Shown piece by piece: positions 5,943 to 36,097 of a stretch of DNA of 64,000 nt. Within the stretch, counting starts at the first letter, position 1. Every line of letters begins with the position of its first letter. The stretch is taken from positions 124,001 to 188,000 of IMG/VR virus record IMGVR_UViG_3300049043_000112; one strand, 5' to 3'. A program made the translations under genes and the position numbers. Below the pieces are notes generated by a model that did no database searches, had not been told where the DNA came from, and saw only the letters and a list, made by a program, of their open reading frames with translations.

Positions 5943-8900
5943 TCACTGCTCCTCCCAGGTAATACTTGCAGAAATATCCGCTGCTGATGCTCCGCTATTG
6001 TATGTTGTTTGTGATGAAGCACATAGATATAAACTATCTACTTTATTTGTGAGAGGGAAAGAAAGATACTCTTTGTTGTAATCAAAGTATGGTGATAAAT
6101 CATACTGTGCTCCAGATGCAGGTATGAAAATACTTGCCACAACAGTACCAGTTCCAGGAATTGGACTTCTTACTTGAGGATTAACTTTAATTGAAGATAA
6201 TGCTGCAAGAGTAAATTCGGTTGTAATGCCAGAAACTCCATTTCCAGTTGGATCACTATTTTCTTCTTTCAGGAAACTATTTGTGGTCGTCAGAACAATA
6301 TTATCAGATGTTGAATTCAGGGCATAGAAATAATAACCACTAACTGTTCCTCTATTTTCAAGGTAACCTAAAACTGAAATTGGTTTTTGAGTTACATCAT
6401 TCTGATAATATCCTCTAAAGTATCCATAAACTCCAGTATTATCTGAGAGATAAGATGAATTACTTACACCAACCTGTGTTGGATTTCCAGTCTTTCCAAT
6501 ATTTGCACTTGCAGAAAGAGAAAGAGTTCCTGTTGTTGAAGCAGTTGTTTGGAAAATAGGAGTTTTTAGGAGATTTAATTTAACAACTCCAGTAGATCCA
6601 GAAGAAAGACGAGTTGGATAAACTTGAGTTCTATTTCTTACATTTCTTCCAGTGCTGCTTTGAATAAAATCTCTACACTTCAGACCAATCAATGGAGTAA
6701 GTCTATCTGGAATTACTGTAATTGTAGATAATGATGTTGTATTCAATGGAGCATTCAGATAAAGTCTTCTATTCGTTGTATCTACAAAATTAACTTGAAT
6801 ATTTTGGTCTAAGGGATTTGAAGTAACAACTTTGGCACCAACATAGAAAGATGTTGAAAGTCCTGCAGATGTTCCAGCAGTGATATATGGATCTGATGTG
6901 GAAACTCCTGCATTTGTAAGTACAACTTCTGTTCCACCAGCACCGACAGTGTATAGTCTCTTTGAACCATAAACACTTAGAGTTGATGGAGTTGAATAAC
7001 TAAAGAGTTTTACAGTTCCTCTATCTCCACCATCAATATAGTATGAAGCACCATACTTAACAATATGTTCAGAGGATGAACCATAAGAGAACGTAGATGC
7101 AAGTCTCTTATTGTTCGCATATCCAAAACGATTTGCTCCACCACCACCATAAACAAGATAAGTAATTGGAAGAGTAGCATTTCCAAGAGATGAAACTTTC
7201 AGTTGATTAGATGCTCTAAGGTGATGAACTCTTACCCATCTTGCTTCACCATTGCTTACAGGAACATAAGCAAGGAATAGAGCACCAACAGCACCATACC
7301 AGGAGAATTCAATCTTATACATTGTAACCTTGGTTAGGTCAATGTCCCAGATGCTGGTATCAGTTAATATTTCTCCTGTATCAGGATCAACTACAGGTTC
7401 CCCTGCCCTCTTATCACTTACAACATCACTATAAAGTAGGTCTTCAGTCTCTCCATCAAGACAATCACCACTAAATCTAAATCTTGGAATACGATATTCA
7501 TAAACGTTCCAGTATTCTTTCTTTACGTTTTGATTAACCCACTTATCATAATAAGTATTAACTGCATCAATTTGATCTTTAAGAGTTGATGTATCAGAAA
7601 CTCCGAGAGAAGTGTCAACATATCCTTCATTGTTTCCATCACCATCTTCATACAGATATGGAAACATTCCAGTTGGTTTAACTGTAGTATATTTCGTTCT
7701 CGATGCATTAATCAGAGCACCACTCGTTGGTTGTACAAAAGGAACTGGAGTAATTAAAACGTGTGATGAAATTCCAGTAACATTTGTAATTCCAGTTAAG
7801 GAACTTCCATCTAAATTATTCAGTGTCAGTGTTCCTCTACCAGTCGAACTATTGACAGAAACAGATGCGAGTCTATAAATCTTAGTATCTGTAAATCCAG
7901 TAATGACTCCAACATTTGTCCCTTTGGAGTATGATACGTATTGCCCAGTGGAAAGACCAACTGCCATTCCACCAGATTGATAATAAGTAGGAACCGTCGA
8001 AATACCAATATTAACGGTAAATGAAGTGCTTGAATTAACTTGTAGAACATTATATCCAAAAGTTCTATTTGGATAATATTTTGGAGTAACTGGATCAAGA
8101 TAACAAGTCATCCCAATGCCACTTAGAGTTACATACTTACCAGCATCAAAACCGTGAGCAGCAGAGGTCGTAATGACCATTAAACCTGTGCTTATATCAT
8201 ACGTTGCATTTGTAATGGTTTTACCAAGACCAGCAACTGAAATCGTATTTCCACCAGTAACTGATGTAATTCCAACTTGTGATTCACTTTGAAGTAGTGA
8301 TGGATCATAAACTGCTGCATGAGTCATCAGCAGATTATCTCTTAAAATTACAAGGTCACCAAACTTTTTAGGTGTTGCTACTGGATTTTGAAGCGCAGTT
8401 GAATTACTTTGTGACTCTGAACCTCTTGCCGACAGGGGATTTAAAGGATTCGTTCTTCCATAGTCTTGAGTTTGCTGACCTGCGCCAGTTCCAAATGTAA
8501 GAGGGTTTTCATAAATGATGGATTGTGTTCTTCTTACAACACTAAAGTTATCTCCTGTTCCATCATTTCTAGATTCCCAATAATATCCATCATAGTTATC
8601 AAAAATACCATACTTACGAACCGCAGGGTTTTGGACTGATGCACCATCATCATTGATTAGAGATGTTTTAACACCAAAAGTCGCTGCTGATACACGTCCT
8701 GGTTGGTATCTAAAGAATCTCTTTGATGTTAGGATGGCAGTTCTATCTGCTGGACCTTCAATCAGTGCTCCAGACTCTTCAGGGACGTGAGTTAGACCCC
8801 ATCCCATCGTTTGACCCACACCAGAATAAACACCAGTTCCAGCGACTGTGGAGTATTGTTCAGGAGATGGTGACCATTCTGTAGGGTTTACATCATAAGT

Positions 8901-16349: not shown

Positions 16350-16433
16350 TGCGAGTAGGGAGACTTGAACTCCCACGGGCATACGCCCAACAGATTTTAA
16401 GTCTGGTGTGTCTACCGATTCCACCATACTCGC
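16350..16433 (-). tRNA. tRNA-Leu(UAA)
   Basis: GCGAGTA/TACTCGC acceptor stem, TGGTGGAATCGGTAGACAC D region, anticodon loop CTTAAAA, long variable arm, GTTCAAGTC T loop; CCA not encoded. Confidence 0.93.
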
Positions 16434-16443
16434 TTGTGGGACC

Positions 16444-16472
16444 ATTATAACTCTTAGAGTCTTAATGGTCAA
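16444..16472 (-). promoter_or_regulatory. Sigma70-type promoter for tRNA-Leu, overlapping an inverted repeat
   Basis: TTGACC-N17-TATAAT on the minus strand; GACCATTA...TAATGGTC inverted repeat spans it. Confidence 0.8.
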
Positions 16473-16473
16473 G

Positions 16474-16546
16474 TGCTGGTTGCGAGGATCGAACTCGCCT
16501 CCCATCGATTATGAGTCGATTGCATTCGCCAGATTGCTAAACCAGC
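16474..16546 (-). tRNA. tRNA with CAU anticodon (non-initiator; probably Ile2/lysidine type, alternatively elongator Met)
   Basis: GCTGGTT/AACCAGC acceptor with paired G1-C72; anticodon arm ATCGA-CTCATAA-TCGAT with C29:G41 as in tRNA-Ile2; GTTCGATC T loop. Confidence 0.88.
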
Positions 16547-16575
16547 ATTCGCTATTCGCAAATAGAGAATAGCAA

Positions 16576-16667
16576 TAGGGACACCTGGATTCGAACCAGG
16601 ACCTCGCGGTAATCTGCCGCTAATACAAGGTATAAGCTTGCTGTTCTAACCGTTGAACTATGCCCCC
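16576..16667 (-). tRNA. tRNA with Ile(UAU) anticodon and a 24-nt variable region (92 nt)
   Basis: GGGGGCA/TGTCCCT acceptor, GTTC/GAAC D stem, GCAAG-CTTATAC-CTTGT anticodon arm, variable region ATTAGCGGCAGATTACCGCGAGGT, CCTGG-TTCGAAT-CCAGG T arm. Confidence 0.88.
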
Positions 16668-34188: not shown

Positions 34189-34825
34189 TTAGACCCACTC
34201 CAGAGCTTCGGCAACTGTTGGAAACTGTTCGGTAAACACCTTCTTACATTCCAGAGCAATGTCCATATGCTCTTTCTGAGTACCGTTTGCGGAACGAAGA
34301 TTGATGTAATGAATCCAGGAACGGCAAGAATCCTGTCATGTAAATGCGCGTAGGGGTCGCCAGAGGCAGTACAAACCTTGCACACTCCTTAGCAACTCCG
34401 TGGTCTAGAAGTTCCTTGTAGAGGCGCATAGAGTGTGCAAAATGCTCTTGAATCTTGCTCTGGAGACCCAGTTTCTCATACTCACCAATATCGTCAATCG
34501 AGTTCTGACGATTCTTAGTGTCCTGACGGCGAAGGTCAGGCACAGGAATATATTCACTCAACAGGGAAGAATCAGCATAACGCTGTGAAAACTCTTGGAA
34601 CGTGAAACTACGATGGCGCAGAATCTGTGCTGCAATACCACGGTTCGTTTCAATCTCAAGACTCATAGACGACTGCTCAAAAACAGACCAATGATTGTGC
34701 TTAATACAATAACGTAGCAGACCTGCATAGTTTTCAGAATCTTGATTTGCTGGATTAGAAACCCTAGCAATATACGCCATTGTTTGTTCTGCATCGGGAG
34801 TTACACTGATAAGTTTTACAGTCAT
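34189..34825 (-). CDS. thyX: Flavin-dependent thymidylate synthase ThyX (indel near 34330)
   Basis: [38 protein letters not shown]; the shifted frame continues [17 protein letters not shown]...EALEWV*. Confidence 0.93.
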
Positions 34826-35183: not shown

Positions 35184-35210
35184 AAAAAAAGGGGGGAATC
35201 AACCCCCCGA
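35184..35210 (-). terminator. Intrinsic terminator closing the riboswitch/DUF4278 unit
   Basis: GGGGGG-TTGATT-CCCCCC followed by T7 on the minus strand. Confidence 0.85.
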
Positions 35211-35212
35211 CT

Positions 35213-35296
35213 TTAATTGAATAAAAACTGAATATAAAGCGATAATAGCATAATTGCAACTGCACAACCTGCGGTAATTTGTAATATCGCAAACAT
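35213..35296 (-). CDS. 27-aa hydrophobic micropeptide
   Basis: MFAILQITAGCAVAIMLLSLYIQFLFN*; start overlaps the upstream stop (TGATG). Confidence 0.55.
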   Translation of the reverse strand: MFAILQITAGCAVAIMLLSLYIQFLFN

Positions 35297-35556
35297 CACT
35301 TTGCACCAACTAGTTGTGCTAATTGTGCTTGATGACGACGCTCTTCTTTTTGTTTTTGTTCTTTAATTAATTGAAGGAAGTTAAGTTTCTTCATTTCCCA
35401 CCTCCCTTGGATTTTTCCATTAGAGAGTTTGTTTCCATTTTCATCCACCCAGAACATTGCTCCGCGATAGATTTCTACGTGTGGTTGAATCTTGAACGTT
35501 TGATTTGGACGTTCAGTAGTGTCATATTCGACACCACGATATACGACTTTAGACAT
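35296..35556 (-). CDS. DUF4278-like small protein, possibly plus a separate basic peptide (MKKLNFLQ..., ATG at 35394)
   Basis: Two YRG(V/A) motifs (VVYRGVEY, EIYRGAMF); strong RBS AAGGAG. A second RBS-like GGAGGTGG before ATG 35394 suggests two genes joined by an indel. Confidence 0.7.
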   Translation of the reverse strand: MSKVVYRGVEYDTTERPNQTFKIQPHVEIYRGAMFWVDENGNKLSNGKIQGRWEMKKLNFLQLIKEQKQKEERRHQAQLAQLVGAK

Positions 35557-35588
35557 TAGGTTTTCTCCTTAATTTTGAGGCTAAAGAG

Positions 35589-35772
35589 CGTTCCTTCAGT
35601 CGGCTTTTGCGTCTAATGGAAAGTTATCCCACCTACAAGTTTTTGGCGAAACATCTTTGATTTGTTGTACGAGTTCTTTTTTAACTTCCAAAGGAAGATT
35701 TTAAGAACCAATATTTGAAATCAAGACATTTGCTTGAAAACAAGTTAATAGCAGAGTTTCCATAGATGAACG
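35589..35772 (-). promoter_or_regulatory. Glutamine-riboswitch-like aptamer 2 (glnA / Downstream-peptide family) with expanded P2
   Basis: CGTTCA-TCTATGGAAA ... TTTCCATTAGA-CGCAAAAGCCGACTGAAG-GAACG; P1 CGTTC/GAACG; directly upstream of the DUF4278-like RBS. Confidence 0.75.
35596..35763 (-). CDS. Small two-Cys ORF nested in aptamer 2 (56 codons; in-frame TAA at codon 21)
   Basis: METLLLTCFQANVLISNIGS*NLPLEVKKELVQQIKDVSPKTCRWDNFPLDAKAD*. Confidence 0.6.
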
Positions 35773-35776
35773 ATTC

Positions 35777-36033
35777 CGTTCCGAGTCGGCTTACTTCCGT
35801 CCTATTGAATTGTTCAGCACTTAAGTCTCACAACATCCTTTCGGAGTTCTAATAGCAATCGGTCTTCTCTTCTTTGGTCTACTACATCGTCGTTTTTAAC
35901 GATGTCCATTAGTTCCCAAGCTGCACCACAACTTATCGTCACTTGAGTATCAGATTTGGTAAGTTGTGGAGTAGAGATAGAAAGAAGTGGAACCCATGCT
36001 AAAAGCAAAAGTGCTTTAGTCATAGGATGAACG
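35777..36033 (-). promoter_or_regulatory. Glutamine-riboswitch-like aptamer 1 with expanded P2
   Basis: CGTTCA-TCCTAT ... ATAGGA-CGGAAGTAAG-CCGACTCG-GAACG; GGAAGTAA is the E-loop-like segment of glnA-type aptamers. Confidence 0.75.
35814..36023 (-). CDS. 69-aa ORF nested in aptamer 1 (signal-peptide-like N-terminus, two Cys)
   Basis: MTKALLLLAWVPLLSIS...SCGAAWELMDIV...LELRKDVVRLKC*. Confidence 0.7.
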   Translation of the reverse strand: MTKALLLLAWVPLLSISTPQLTKSDTQVTISCGAAWELMDIVKNDDVVDQRREDRLLLELRKDVVRLKC

Positions 36034-36043
36034 TTAGAGGGAT

Positions 36044-36097
36044 ATTATACCTCTATTCATTGATATTTAGGGAGTTTTGTGTGTATTTCCTGATACA
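36044..36097 (-). promoter_or_regulatory. Composite promoter: NtcA box, late CTAAATA and -10 TATAAT
   Basis: TGTA-N8-TACA at 36082-36097; CTAAATA at 36070-36064; TATAAT at 36049-36044, 10 nt upstream of aptamer 1. Confidence 0.7.

What the first reader, a model, noticed from the sequence alone, without database searches (positions are those of the whole stretch)
35589..36033. Tandem glutamine-riboswitch-like aptamers, each with a protein-coding ORF nested in its P2 arm
Seen in sequence (minus strand): two aptamer-like units 4 nt apart. Unit 1 is CGTTCA-TCCTAT[...]ATAGGA-CGGAAGTAAGCCGACTCG-GAACG (36033-35777). Unit 2 is CGTTCA-TCTATGGAAA[...]TTTCCATTAGA-CGCAAAAGCCGACTGAAG-GAACG (35772-35589). 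Where a short P2 hairpin is expected, each carries about 140-215 nt holding an ORF whose ATG (36023 and 35763) lies at or in the 5' strand of P2. ORF1 stops 8 nt before the 3' strand. ORF2 reads through the 3' aptamer core (GAC GCA AAA GCC GAC TGA = DAKAD*). Neither ORF has a visible Shine-Dalgarno. Established: glnA and Downstream-peptide glutamine riboswitches have a CGUU(C/G)...(G/C)AACG P1, occur in cyanobacteria and their phages, can be tandem and precede DUF4278-type genes. Inference: glutamine-stabilised folding would bury the nested start codons, and translation of the nested ORFs would unwind the aptamers. That would give a switch between nested peptides and the downstream DUF4278 unit, a 'gene inside the riboswitch' architecture that standard covariance models would probably miss because of the huge loops. 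I do not know it as a described mechanism.
Basis: partly seen in the sequence, partly recalled or inferred. Interest (0 to 1): 0.9.

Follow-up and report, generated by a model that had tools for sequence, protein, structure and literature searches.

The report
Small genes nested inside glutamine riboswitches
A cyanophage leader carries two glutamine-sensing RNA switches in tandem, and the side hairpin of each has been enlarged to hold a small protein gene that starts inside the switch's stem and ends at or in its ligand-binding core; this layout recurs in many related phages and I found no published description of it.

Summary
On the minus strand, 36033-35589 holds two type-1 (glnA, RF01739) glutamine aptamers 4 nt apart, upstream of a DUF4278/IF17-like gene. 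In each, the 10-28 nt P2 hairpin of compact relatives is replaced by 155-228 nt.

Rfam misses both units. A covariance model built from the two loop-deleted units hits Rfam-validated compact relatives at 35-52 bits.

Among 124 related phage loci, P2 length is bimodal, and all four compact/expanded combinations occur. Every expanded unit has an ATG 9-13 nt after the start of CGTTCA and no Shine-Dalgarno. All but one carry an intact 49-69 aa ORF.

The ORFs code for protein: dN/dS is about 0.2 and two Cys are invariant. Long-range P2 covaries, and the ORF ends pair far better than controls.

Glutamine-gated, mutually exclusive translation and folding is plausible but untested. I found no prior description. 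I rate it a new variant of a known riboswitch class, of high interest.

The parts
36036..36070 (-). Promoter-like region: CTAAATA motif (36070-36064) and a palindrome AGAGG/CCTCT (36054-36050 / 36040-36036) enclosing TATAAT (36049-36044). It ends 2 nt before P1.
   Evidence: The same layout (TTGACT-like -35, 17-18 nt spacer, -10-like hexamer inside a covarying palindrome) is seen upstream of unit 1 in most related loci. No transcription start site data were available.
36028..36033 (-). Unit 1, P1 5' strand CGTTC plus the junction A.
   Evidence: Matches the RF01739 consensus AUCGUUCA. Present in all 33 expanded unit 1 copies although it was not part of the search pattern.
36022..36027 (-). Unit 1, P2 5' strand TCCTAT. 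It contains A and T of the ORF1 start codon.
35814..36023 (-). Nested ORF1: 69 aa, N-terminal hydrophobic segment, invariant Cys32 and Cys69, no SD.
   Evidence: dN/dS is 0.19 over interior codons in 15 independent pairs. AF2 gives a helical hairpin between the two Cys. No Pfam or PHROG hit. Homologous to the unit-2 family (hhalign 84%, E 7e-6).
36009..36015 (-). Extension of unit 1 P2: AGCACTT (ORF1 codons 3-5) pairs with AAGTGCT at 35822-35816 (the last codons and first base of the stop).
   Evidence: Read. Part of the -14.3 kcal/mol long-range duplex and of the MFE fold.
35800..35805 (-). Unit 1, P2 3' strand ATAGGA.
35777..35799 (-). Unit 1 aptamer core CGGAAGTAAGCCGACTCG and P1 3' strand GAACG (35781-35777).
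   Evidence: Matches RF01739 consensus CGGAAGUA...GGAACG. 94% identical across many cyanomyoviruses.
35773..35776 (-). 4-nt linker GAAT between the units.
35757..35772 (-). Unit 2, P1 5' strand CGTTC(A) and P2 5' strand TCTATGGAAA, which contains the ORF2 ATG (35763-35761).
35701..35763 (-). Nested ORF2, first piece: 20 codons, then an in-frame TAA (35703-35701).
   Evidence: Relatives have intact 49-67 aa ORFs (62 of 63).
35596..35700 (-). Nested ORF2, second piece, same frame. It carries the second conserved Cys and the tail DAKAD, and ends at a TGA (35598-35596) inside the aptamer core.
35612..35622 (-). Unit 2, P2 3' strand TTTCCATTAGA. It pairs with TCT-ATGGAAA with one bulged base.
35589..35611 (-). 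Unit 2 aptamer core CGCAAAAGCCGACTGAAG and P1 3' strand GAACG (35593-35589).
   Evidence: A compact orthologue in S-CREM1 is annotated as a glnA riboswitch and scores 33.5 bits to RF01739. Others score 35-40 bits.
35565..35588 (-). Expression platform: CTCTTTAG (35588-35581), directly after P1, pairs with TTAAGGAG (35572-35565), which holds the Shine-Dalgarno of the downstream gene.
   Evidence: 8-bp hairpin, -9.0 kcal/mol, z -1.4. The same platform occurs in compact and expanded loci. It parallels the anti-RBS model for gifB (PMC6212724).
35296..35556 (-). Regulated gene: DUF4278/IF17-like N-terminal part (MSKVVYRGVEYDT...) fused in frame to a phrog_545-like part. 86 aa.
   Evidence: PF14105, E 0.004, below cut-off; phrog_5049 1.3e-7; phrog_545 5.9e-8.
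35185..35299 (-). 28-aa hydrophobic ORF (35299-35213) and an intrinsic terminator (stem 35208-35191 plus T run), the likely end of the transcription unit.

Best explanation
This is the leader of a cyanomyovirus operon for an IF17-like (DUF4278) protein. It contains two type-1 glutamine aptamers in tandem.

In each aptamer the terminal loop of helix P2 has been replaced by a small gene. That gene encodes a 50-70 aa protein with a hydrophobic N-terminus and a helical hairpin between two invariant cysteines. The aptamer is therefore split: its 5' strands (P1, P2) and its 3' strands plus ligand-binding core lie 160-230 nt apart. They are brought together by a long-range P2 helix formed by the two ends of the nested gene.

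Shown:
- the architecture;
- its conservation;
- that the nested genes code for protein;
- retention of all aptamer elements;
- P2 covariation.

Inferred mechanism:
- The SD-less start codon sits in the P2 5' strand, just after the P1 5' strand, and the stop codon sits at or in the core. Aptamer folding and translation of the nested gene should therefore exclude each other.
- A ribosome can load while the 3' half is still untranscribed, and each ribosome that reaches the end reopens the helix.
- Glutamine binding stabilises P1 and the core. It locks the closed form, shuts off the nested gene, and frees the Shine-Dalgarno of the IF17-like gene from the anti-SD that abuts P1, as in compact relatives and in gifB.

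In this window the unit-2 gene carries a premature stop, so ribosomes would not reach aptamer 2.
For: Identity as glutamine type-1 aptamers:
- Both halves match the RF01739 consensus.
- Compact orthologues at the same position upstream of the same gene reach the Rfam gathering score (35.3-40.3 bits).
- Loop-deleted window units score 48.3 and 37.4 bits against an HMM built only from compact units; shuffles reach at most 5.9.
- A CM built from the two loop-deleted window units finds those Rfam-validated aptamers at 35-52 bits, E 1e-7 to 1e-11.
- The nucleotides that contact glutamine in the solved structures (C1-G59, G2-C58, G22; PMC6698751) are present.

Architecture:
- P2 length is bimodal: 10-28 versus 190-228 nt in unit 1, and 12-22 versus 138-199 nt in unit 2.
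- All four compact/expanded combinations occur.

Nested genes:
- The ATG lies 9-13 nt after the start of CGTTCA in all 96 expanded units, and 95 ORFs are intact.
- dN/dS is 0.19 and 0.22, with third-position changes dominant.
- Two Cys are invariant and the two families are homologous.
- 751 database clusters were found; 113 of the top 120 end in the core-encoded DA[KNQ]xD tail.

Structure kept:
- P2 pairs 3-5 covary: C-G, U-A, A-U and U-G, with almost no mismatches.
- Duplex energy of the ORF ends is -14.9/-13.4 kcal/mol, against -10.2/-8.5 when swapped between loci and -6.9/-7.4 when shuffled. Up to 20 contiguous pairs occur.
- The MFE fold of the window RNA forms both long-range P2 helices (z -3.2).

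Start-site logic:
- The AUG is at least partly paired in 31/31 and 58/59 unique units.
- An SD-like motif occurs in 0/31 and 1/59 nested starts, against 106/107 for the downstream gene.

Platform: the anti-SD:SD hairpin abuts P1, as proposed for the ON-switch gifB riboswitch.
Against: - There are no ligand-binding, structure-probing, transcript or ribosome data for any split aptamer.
- Rfam finds nothing in the window, even at E<=10.
- The P3 hairpin of the consensus is reduced to about 8 nt in this phage clade.
- Closing P1/P2 across 160-230 nt of translated RNA may be slow.
- The MFE fold prefers an inter-unit GAACG-loop-CGUUC hairpin to the native P1 helices.
- In the solved type-1 structure, ligand binding is reported mainly to stabilise P1. 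P2, and hence AUG occlusion, may form with or without glutamine.
- Compact relatives show the nested genes are dispensable for the riboswitch. This fits a passenger model equally well.
Confidence: 0.55

Rival explanations
1. Passenger genes. The aptamers work normally for the downstream IF17-like gene. The P2 loop is simply a tolerant place where small genes have lodged and gained a promoter. Their translation is not meaningfully controlled by glutamine. The long-range P2 helix is kept only so that the aptamer can still fold.
For: - Compact and expanded versions share the same promoter region, platform and downstream gene.
- All four combinations occur, so the inserts are optional.
- P2 loops vary in length and sequence even among compact units.
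- The window keeps a good unit-2 P2 helix although its ORF2 is broken.
Against: - The start codon is fixed within P2 in 96 of 96 units, 9-13 nt after the start of CGTTCA.
- SD motifs are systematically absent.
- Stop codons are placed at or in the core.
This is tighter than mere tolerance requires. The protein family is found almost only in this context.
Confidence: 0.3
2. Relic aptamers. Insertion of the genes destroyed aptamer function. The conserved half-sites persist because they now serve as coding sequence (GRK*, DAKAD*), as translation-initiation or coupling signals, or as recombination sites.
For: - Part of each core is coding in many loci.
- No Rfam hit in the window.
- The AF2 model shows the DAKAD tail as disordered, so that tail is not dictated by protein structure.
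Against: - Non-coding parts are equally conserved: the P1 5' strand upstream of the ATG, and GAAGGAACG after the stop.
- P2 covaries and is extended to 10-20 bp in many loci.
- Loop-deleted units score like compact ones.
- In the freshwater unit-1 type the whole core is non-coding yet intact.
Confidence: 0.08
3. Permuted central aptamer. The conserved 49-nt block (3' half of unit 1, linker, 5' half of unit 2) folds on its own. GAACG-loop-CGUUC acts as a closed P1 and P2 is open. The distal half-sites are then irrelevant.
For: - The block is the most conserved stretch (94% identity across phages).
- The inter-unit hairpin appears in the MFE fold.
Against: - Cross-unit P2 pairing reaches at least 4 contiguous pairs in only 28% of loci, against 95-98% for own-unit pairing.
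- The block alone folds no better than shuffles (z 0.33).
- The same block exists in ordinary compact tandems.
Confidence: 0.02

Closest known systems
Type-1 glutamine riboswitch (glnA RNA, RF01739), including tandem arrangements, upstream of gifB/DUF4278 genes
   Same: - P1 CGUUC/GAACG, junction A, P2, and the core ACG(G/C)AAGUA...GGAACG.
- Tandem units.
- A DUF4278/IF17-like gene downstream.
- An anti-SD next to P1.
   Different: - P2 carries 155-228 nt holding a conserved protein gene, instead of a 4-10 nt loop.
- The start codon is inside P2, and the stop is at or in the core.
- P3 is reduced.
- The CM does not detect the units.
Type-2 glutamine riboswitch (Downstream-peptide motif, RF01704)
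   Same: The same ligand-binding core logic, CGUUC...GGAACG and an ACGCA variant of the core, and association with short DUF4278 proteins in marine picocyanobacteria.
   Different: Type 2 uses a pseudoknot and a 3' P2 helix. The phage units have the nested P1 of type 1. No RF01704 match was found.
Homing-endonuclease ORFs in peripheral loops of group I introns (own knowledge)
   Same: A protein gene lodged in a terminal loop of a functional folded RNA, sometimes overlapping core sequence. Translation and RNA folding compete.
   Different: The host RNA here is a metabolite sensor, not a ribozyme. The inserts are not known to be mobile or to encode nucleases. Start and stop positions are locked to aptamer helices.
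Leader-peptide attenuators and long-range start-codon occlusion in RNA phage MS2 (own knowledge)
   Same: Ribosome position on an upstream or embedded ORF decides which RNA structure forms. A start site is hidden by pairing with a distant segment that translation opens.
   Different: The embedded ORFs here encode conserved, folded proteins (dN/dS about 0.2), not sensors of tRNA charging. The competing structure is a ligand-binding aptamer.
Dual-function RNAs (SgrS/SgrT, RNAIII/hld, tmRNA; own knowledge)
   Same: One RNA acts both as a structured regulator and as an mRNA.
   Different: Those are trans-acting sRNAs, or tmRNA. Here the coding part lies inside a cis-acting riboswitch aptamer.

Membership tests
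Glutamine riboswitch type 1 (glnA RNA, RF01739) | Covariance-model score at or above the gathering score (35 bits). | tested here: not met
   No hit in the window at gathering or at E<=10. This is expected, given the 155-228 nt lodged in P2. Compact orthologues score 35.3-40.3 bits.
Glutamine riboswitch type 1 (glnA RNA, RF01739) | Match after in-silico removal of the P2 insert. | tested here: met
   Rfam's own CM could not be run on edited sequence. Substitutes: an HMM from compact units gives 48.3 and 37.4 bits, with shuffles at most 5.9. CM R1, built from the loop-deleted window units, hits Rfam-validated aptamers at 35-52 bits.
Glutamine riboswitch type 1 (glnA RNA, RF01739) | P1 helix CGUUC/GAACG and the nucleotides that contact glutamine (C1-G59, G2-C58, G22). 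| tested here: met
   Present in both units. Contacts taken from PMC6698751.
Glutamine riboswitch type 1 (glnA RNA, RF01739) | P2 helix supported by covariation. | tested here: met
   Pairs 3-5 show three or four pair types with 0-2 mismatches in unit 2; unit 1 has mismatches at pair 4 in bulged helices. Own versus swapped or shuffled duplex energies. Own-unit versus cross-unit pairing.
Glutamine riboswitch type 1 (glnA RNA, RF01739) | P3 hairpin of the three-way junction. | tested here: not met
   Only about 8-10 nt (AGCCGAC...) lie between the core and P1, where the consensus has a 3-bp stem and a 4-nt loop. Rfam aligns this part as a local end in compact relatives.
Glutamine riboswitch type 1 (glnA RNA, RF01739) | Selective binding of L-glutamine with a structural change. 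| not testable with these tools
   Needs in-line probing or ITC.
Glutamine riboswitch type 1 (glnA RNA, RF01739) | Position in the 5' leader of a DUF4278/IF17-type gene, with an anti-SD platform. | tested here: met
   compare with PMC6212724.
Glutamine riboswitch type 2 (Downstream-peptide, RF01704) | Pseudoknot architecture and a CM match. | tested here: not met
   No RF01704 match in the window or in 20 related loci. The units have a nested P1.
DUF4278 (PF14105) / IF17-like | Pfam score at or above 25.3 bits. | tested here: inconclusive
   Window protein: 17.9 bits, E 0.004. It hits phrog_5049 at 1.3e-7. It shares the N-terminal M-x-x-V-x-YRG-x-x-YD motif with about 100 orthologues. The P-SSM4 orthologue scores 24.7 bits.
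PHROG 504 / PHROG 6471 (nested small proteins) | HMM match. | tested here: inconclusive
   Window ORF1 has no PHROG hit. It aligns with phrog_6471-type unit-1 proteins through the two invariant Cys. The unit-1 profile matches the unit-2 profile (phrog_504 type) at 84% probability. Window ORF2 is broken and was not searched read-through.

The most novel reading that the evidence does not exclude
A riboswitch that hosts genes: the aptamer and the gene inside it form a glutamine-gated toggle.
- At low glutamine the open RNA is translated into small cysteine-hairpin proteins, and each passing ribosome keeps the aptamer unfolded.
- At high glutamine the aptamer closes over the SD-less start codons, silences the nested genes and switches on the IF17-like gene.
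- Units with or without a gene behave as exchangeable cassettes that recombine through the conserved half-sites.
Probability: 0.4. Interest if true: 0.9.

Novelty: new variant of a known kind. Interest (0 to 1): 0.82.

Why it matters
Riboswitch aptamers are treated as compact non-coding domains, and search models assume so. Here a validated aptamer class tolerates a conserved protein gene inside a helix, and probably makes use of it. The start codon is in the stem and the stop codon is at or in the ligand-binding core.

If the coupling is real:
- One ligand would give opposite control of two gene sets from one RNA, using translation itself as part of the switch.
- Covariance-model surveys would be shown to under-count riboswitches with large inserts.
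- About 750 clusters of hypothetical phage proteins would be assigned to a regulatory context linked to host nitrogen status during cyanophage infection.

Tried and rejected
- Rfam scans of the window, at gathering score and at E<=10, gave no glutamine hit. The only results were weak chance-level matches, including freshwater-2 at 17 bits over the SD region.
- The permuted central aptamer was rejected.
- Pairwise dN/dS over all pairs gave about 1 for unit 2. This was an artefact of saturated, poorly aligned distant pairs. Independent nearest pairs give 0.22.
- A DNA core pattern found only 5 hits in 185,579 species genomes. All five are the same phage module, on MAG contigs or in a Prochlorococcus single-cell assembly.
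- Pfam gave nothing for the nested proteins.
- A Foldseek search of PDB with the unit-1 model gave nothing below E 3.
- Literature: no paper among those searched or read mentions ORFs inside the aptamer. Ames & Breaker 2011 and Ren et al. 2015 could not be read.

Full report
**1. What is in the sequence**

Read on the minus strand, 36033-35589 contains two units 4 nt apart.

Unit 1:
- CGTTCA (36033-36028).
- TCCTAT (36027-36022).
- 216 nt of insert.
- ATAGGA (35805-35800).
- CGGAAGTAAGCCGACTCG (35799-35782).
- GAACG (35781-35777).

Unit 2:
- CGTTCA (35772-35767).
- TCTATGGAAA (35766-35757).
- 134 nt of insert.
- TTTCCATTAGA (35622-35612).
- CGCAAAAGCCGACTGAAG (35611-35594).
- GAACG (35593-35589).

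ORF2 is not. The ATG at 35763 is followed by an in-frame TAA at 35703-35701. The same frame then runs on to DAKAD-TGA at 35598-35596.

No terminator lies inside the region. One follows the operon at 35208-35185.

**2. Are these glutamine aptamers?**

Rfam finds nothing here, at gathering score or at E<=10. Other evidence says they are.

- Both halves of each unit match the RF01739 consensus, AUCGUUCAuCc...gGaCGGAAGUA...GAAGGAACG, which was displayed.
- BLAST against phage genomes shows that the block joining the two units is about 94% identical in many cyanomyoviruses. These include P-HM1, P-SSM4, P-SSM3, P-RSM3, MED4-213 and P-SSM2.
- In S-CREM1 the same position, upstream of the same gene, holds two compact aptamers annotated as a glnA riboswitch.
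- In S-SRM01, unit 1 is compact and unit 2 holds an intact 55-aa ORF.
- In P-HM1 and P-SSM4 both units hold annotated small genes.
- Compact orthologues in 16 metagenomic phage loci gave nine RF01739 matches of 35.3-40.3 bits, against a gathering score of 35.
- After removing the P2 insert in silico, the window units score 48.3 and 37.4 bits against an HMM built only from compact units. That is within or just below the range of the compact units themselves, and shuffles reach at most 5.9 bits.
- A covariance model built from the two loop-deleted window units recovers those Rfam-validated aptamers at 35-52 bits. In the window itself it sees only the 3' halves.
- The nucleotides that contact glutamine in the solved structures are present.

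The units have the nested P1 of type 1. No type-2 (RF01704) match was found. The P3 hairpin is reduced in this phage clade.

**3. How general is the architecture?**

With the GenBank loci and the window this gives 125 loci.

| | Compact P2 region | Expanded P2 region |
|---|---|---|
| Unit 1 | 10-28 nt (n=90) | 190-228 nt (n=33) |
| Unit 2 | 12-22 nt (n=45) | 138-199 nt (n=63) |

No length falls between the compact and expanded ranges. The combinations are compact/expanded 44, compact/compact 32, expanded/expanded 17 and expanded/compact 13.

The distal half-sites were not part of the search pattern, yet they are present at the expected place wherever the contig extends that far. The promoter-like region and the platform plus DUF4278-type gene are the same in compact and expanded loci.

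A scan of 185,579 species genomes found only five hits. All five are the same phage module.

**4. The nested ORFs are genes**

- All 96 expanded units have an ATG 9-13 nt after the start of CGTTCA, that is, inside the P2 5' strand.
- 95 of them have an intact 49-69 aa ORF. The exception is unit 2 of this window.
- Unit-2 ORFs stop at a fixed point in the core (GAC GCA AAA GCC GAC TGA, DAKAD*).
- Marine unit-1 ORFs stop in the core (GGA CGC AAG TAA, GRK*). The others stop 5-17 nt before it.
- Over interior codons of phylogenetically independent pairs, dN/dS is 0.19 for unit 1 and 0.22 for unit 2. Third-position changes dominate.
- Each family has two invariant cysteines about 35 residues apart.
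- The two profiles match each other (hhalign 84%, E 7e-6).
- AF2 gives a helical hairpin between the cysteines (pLDDT 85-90) and a disordered DAKAD tail.
- The families correspond to PHROG 504 and PHROG 6471, both of unknown function. The window's ORF1 type has no PHROG.
- A profile search found 751 clusters. 113 of the top 120 end in the core-encoded tail, so the protein family is essentially confined to this context.

**5. The split aptamer is still under selection as RNA**

- P2 pairs 3-5 covary, with almost no mismatches.
- Many loci extend P2 to 10-20 contiguous pairs between the first and last codons of the ORF.
- Duplex energies of the two ORF ends are -14.9 and -13.4 kcal/mol. Swapped between loci they are -10.2 and -8.5, and shuffled they are -6.9 and -7.4.
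- Own-unit pairing beats cross-unit pairing: 95-98% of loci against 23-28%. This rejects a permuted central aptamer.
- The MFE fold of the window RNA forms both long-range P2 helices (z -3.2). It replaces the native P1 helices with an inter-unit GAACG-GAAU-CGUUC hairpin. That hairpin may be a real competing structure.

**6. Mechanism (inference)**

- The nested starts lack SD motifs (0/31 and 1/59 unique units). The downstream gene has one in 106 of 107 loci.
- The AUG is at least partly paired in the best long-range duplex in 89 of 90 unique units.
- The stop codon lies within a ribosome footprint of the P1 3' strand.
- In the window, the anti-SD (35588-35581) abuts P1 and pairs with the SD (35572-35565). 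This matches the model proposed for the glutamine ON-switch of gifB (PMC6212724).

The most economical reading is mutual exclusion. Translation of the nested gene keeps the aptamer open. Glutamine-stabilised closure hides the nested start and releases the SD of the IF17-like gene. A passenger model remains a serious rival: the aptamer works and the nested genes are merely tolerated.

**7. Prior knowledge**

None of the following mention ORFs inside the aptamer:
- Weinberg et al. 2010.
- Klähn et al. 2018.
- Huang et al. 2019.
- The S-CREM1 paper.
- The Melnitz phage paper.
- The titles of the 40 top-ranked of 90 papers naming the glutamine riboswitch.

Two key papers were not available: Ames & Breaker 2011 could not be fetched and Ren et al. 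2015 was not read.

**8. Verdict**

The identity and architecture are strongly supported by comparative evidence. The regulatory toggle is plausible and testable but unproven. It is a new variant of a known riboswitch class, of high interest.

One caveat on sequence quality. thyX in the same window carries a frameshift. The single in-frame stop in ORF2 could therefore be an assembly error.

Noticed in passing
window 34189-34825 (minus strand): thyX is frameshifted. The Pfam Thy1 match stops at profile position 153 of 191. The conserved C-terminal part continues in another frame, from about 34325 to 34189. This is either a real pseudogene or an assembly error.
   Followed up: partly
proteins P0057, P0070, P0098, P0107: In four database clusters, the UGA after DAK[AV]D is replaced by a Trp codon. 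The nested unit-2 ORF then runs in frame into the DUF4278 ORF, giving 107-114 aa fusion proteins.
   Followed up: no
window 36036-36070; the 60 nt upstream of unit 1 in L005-L124: A conserved promoter-like layout: a TTGACT-like hexamer, 17-18 nt, then a -10-like hexamer in the loop of a palindrome whose arms covary. It ends 2-3 nt before P1. A CTAAATA/CTATATA motif overlaps it. It could be an operator, a 5' RNA hairpin, or stacked early and late promoters.
   Followed up: partly
window 35296-35556: The DUF4278-like ORF is fused in frame to a phrog_545-like segment. In S-SRM01 that segment is a separate ORF overlapping by ATGA (L004 1603-1740 and 1737-1838).
   Followed up: partly
window 35185-35299: A 28-aa hydrophobic ORF directly follows the DUF4278 gene, then a strong intrinsic terminator. 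Similar short hydrophobic ORFs follow the gene in P-HM1 and P-SSM4.
   Followed up: no
L081 about 6500-6900: A three-unit array: a compact unit, an expanded unit carrying a unit-1-type ORF (GRK* end), then another compact unit before the DUF4278 gene. This suggests cassette-like reshuffling of units.
   Followed up: partly
L003 719-904; L056 586-780; L018 1640-1839: A manA RNA (161-189 bits) lies close to the glutamine-riboswitch module in several phages. PhotoRC-II RNAs occur in L067 and L010.
   Followed up: no
window 16350-16667 (minus strand): Three tRNA genes in a row. Two of them have long variable arms.
   Followed up: no
window 35554-35636: A weak match to Rfam freshwater-2 RNA (17.1 bits, E 4.9). 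It is carried mostly by the AAGGAGAAAAC..AUG ribosome-binding region, which hints that this motif's 3' end is the same kind of leader.
   Followed up: no
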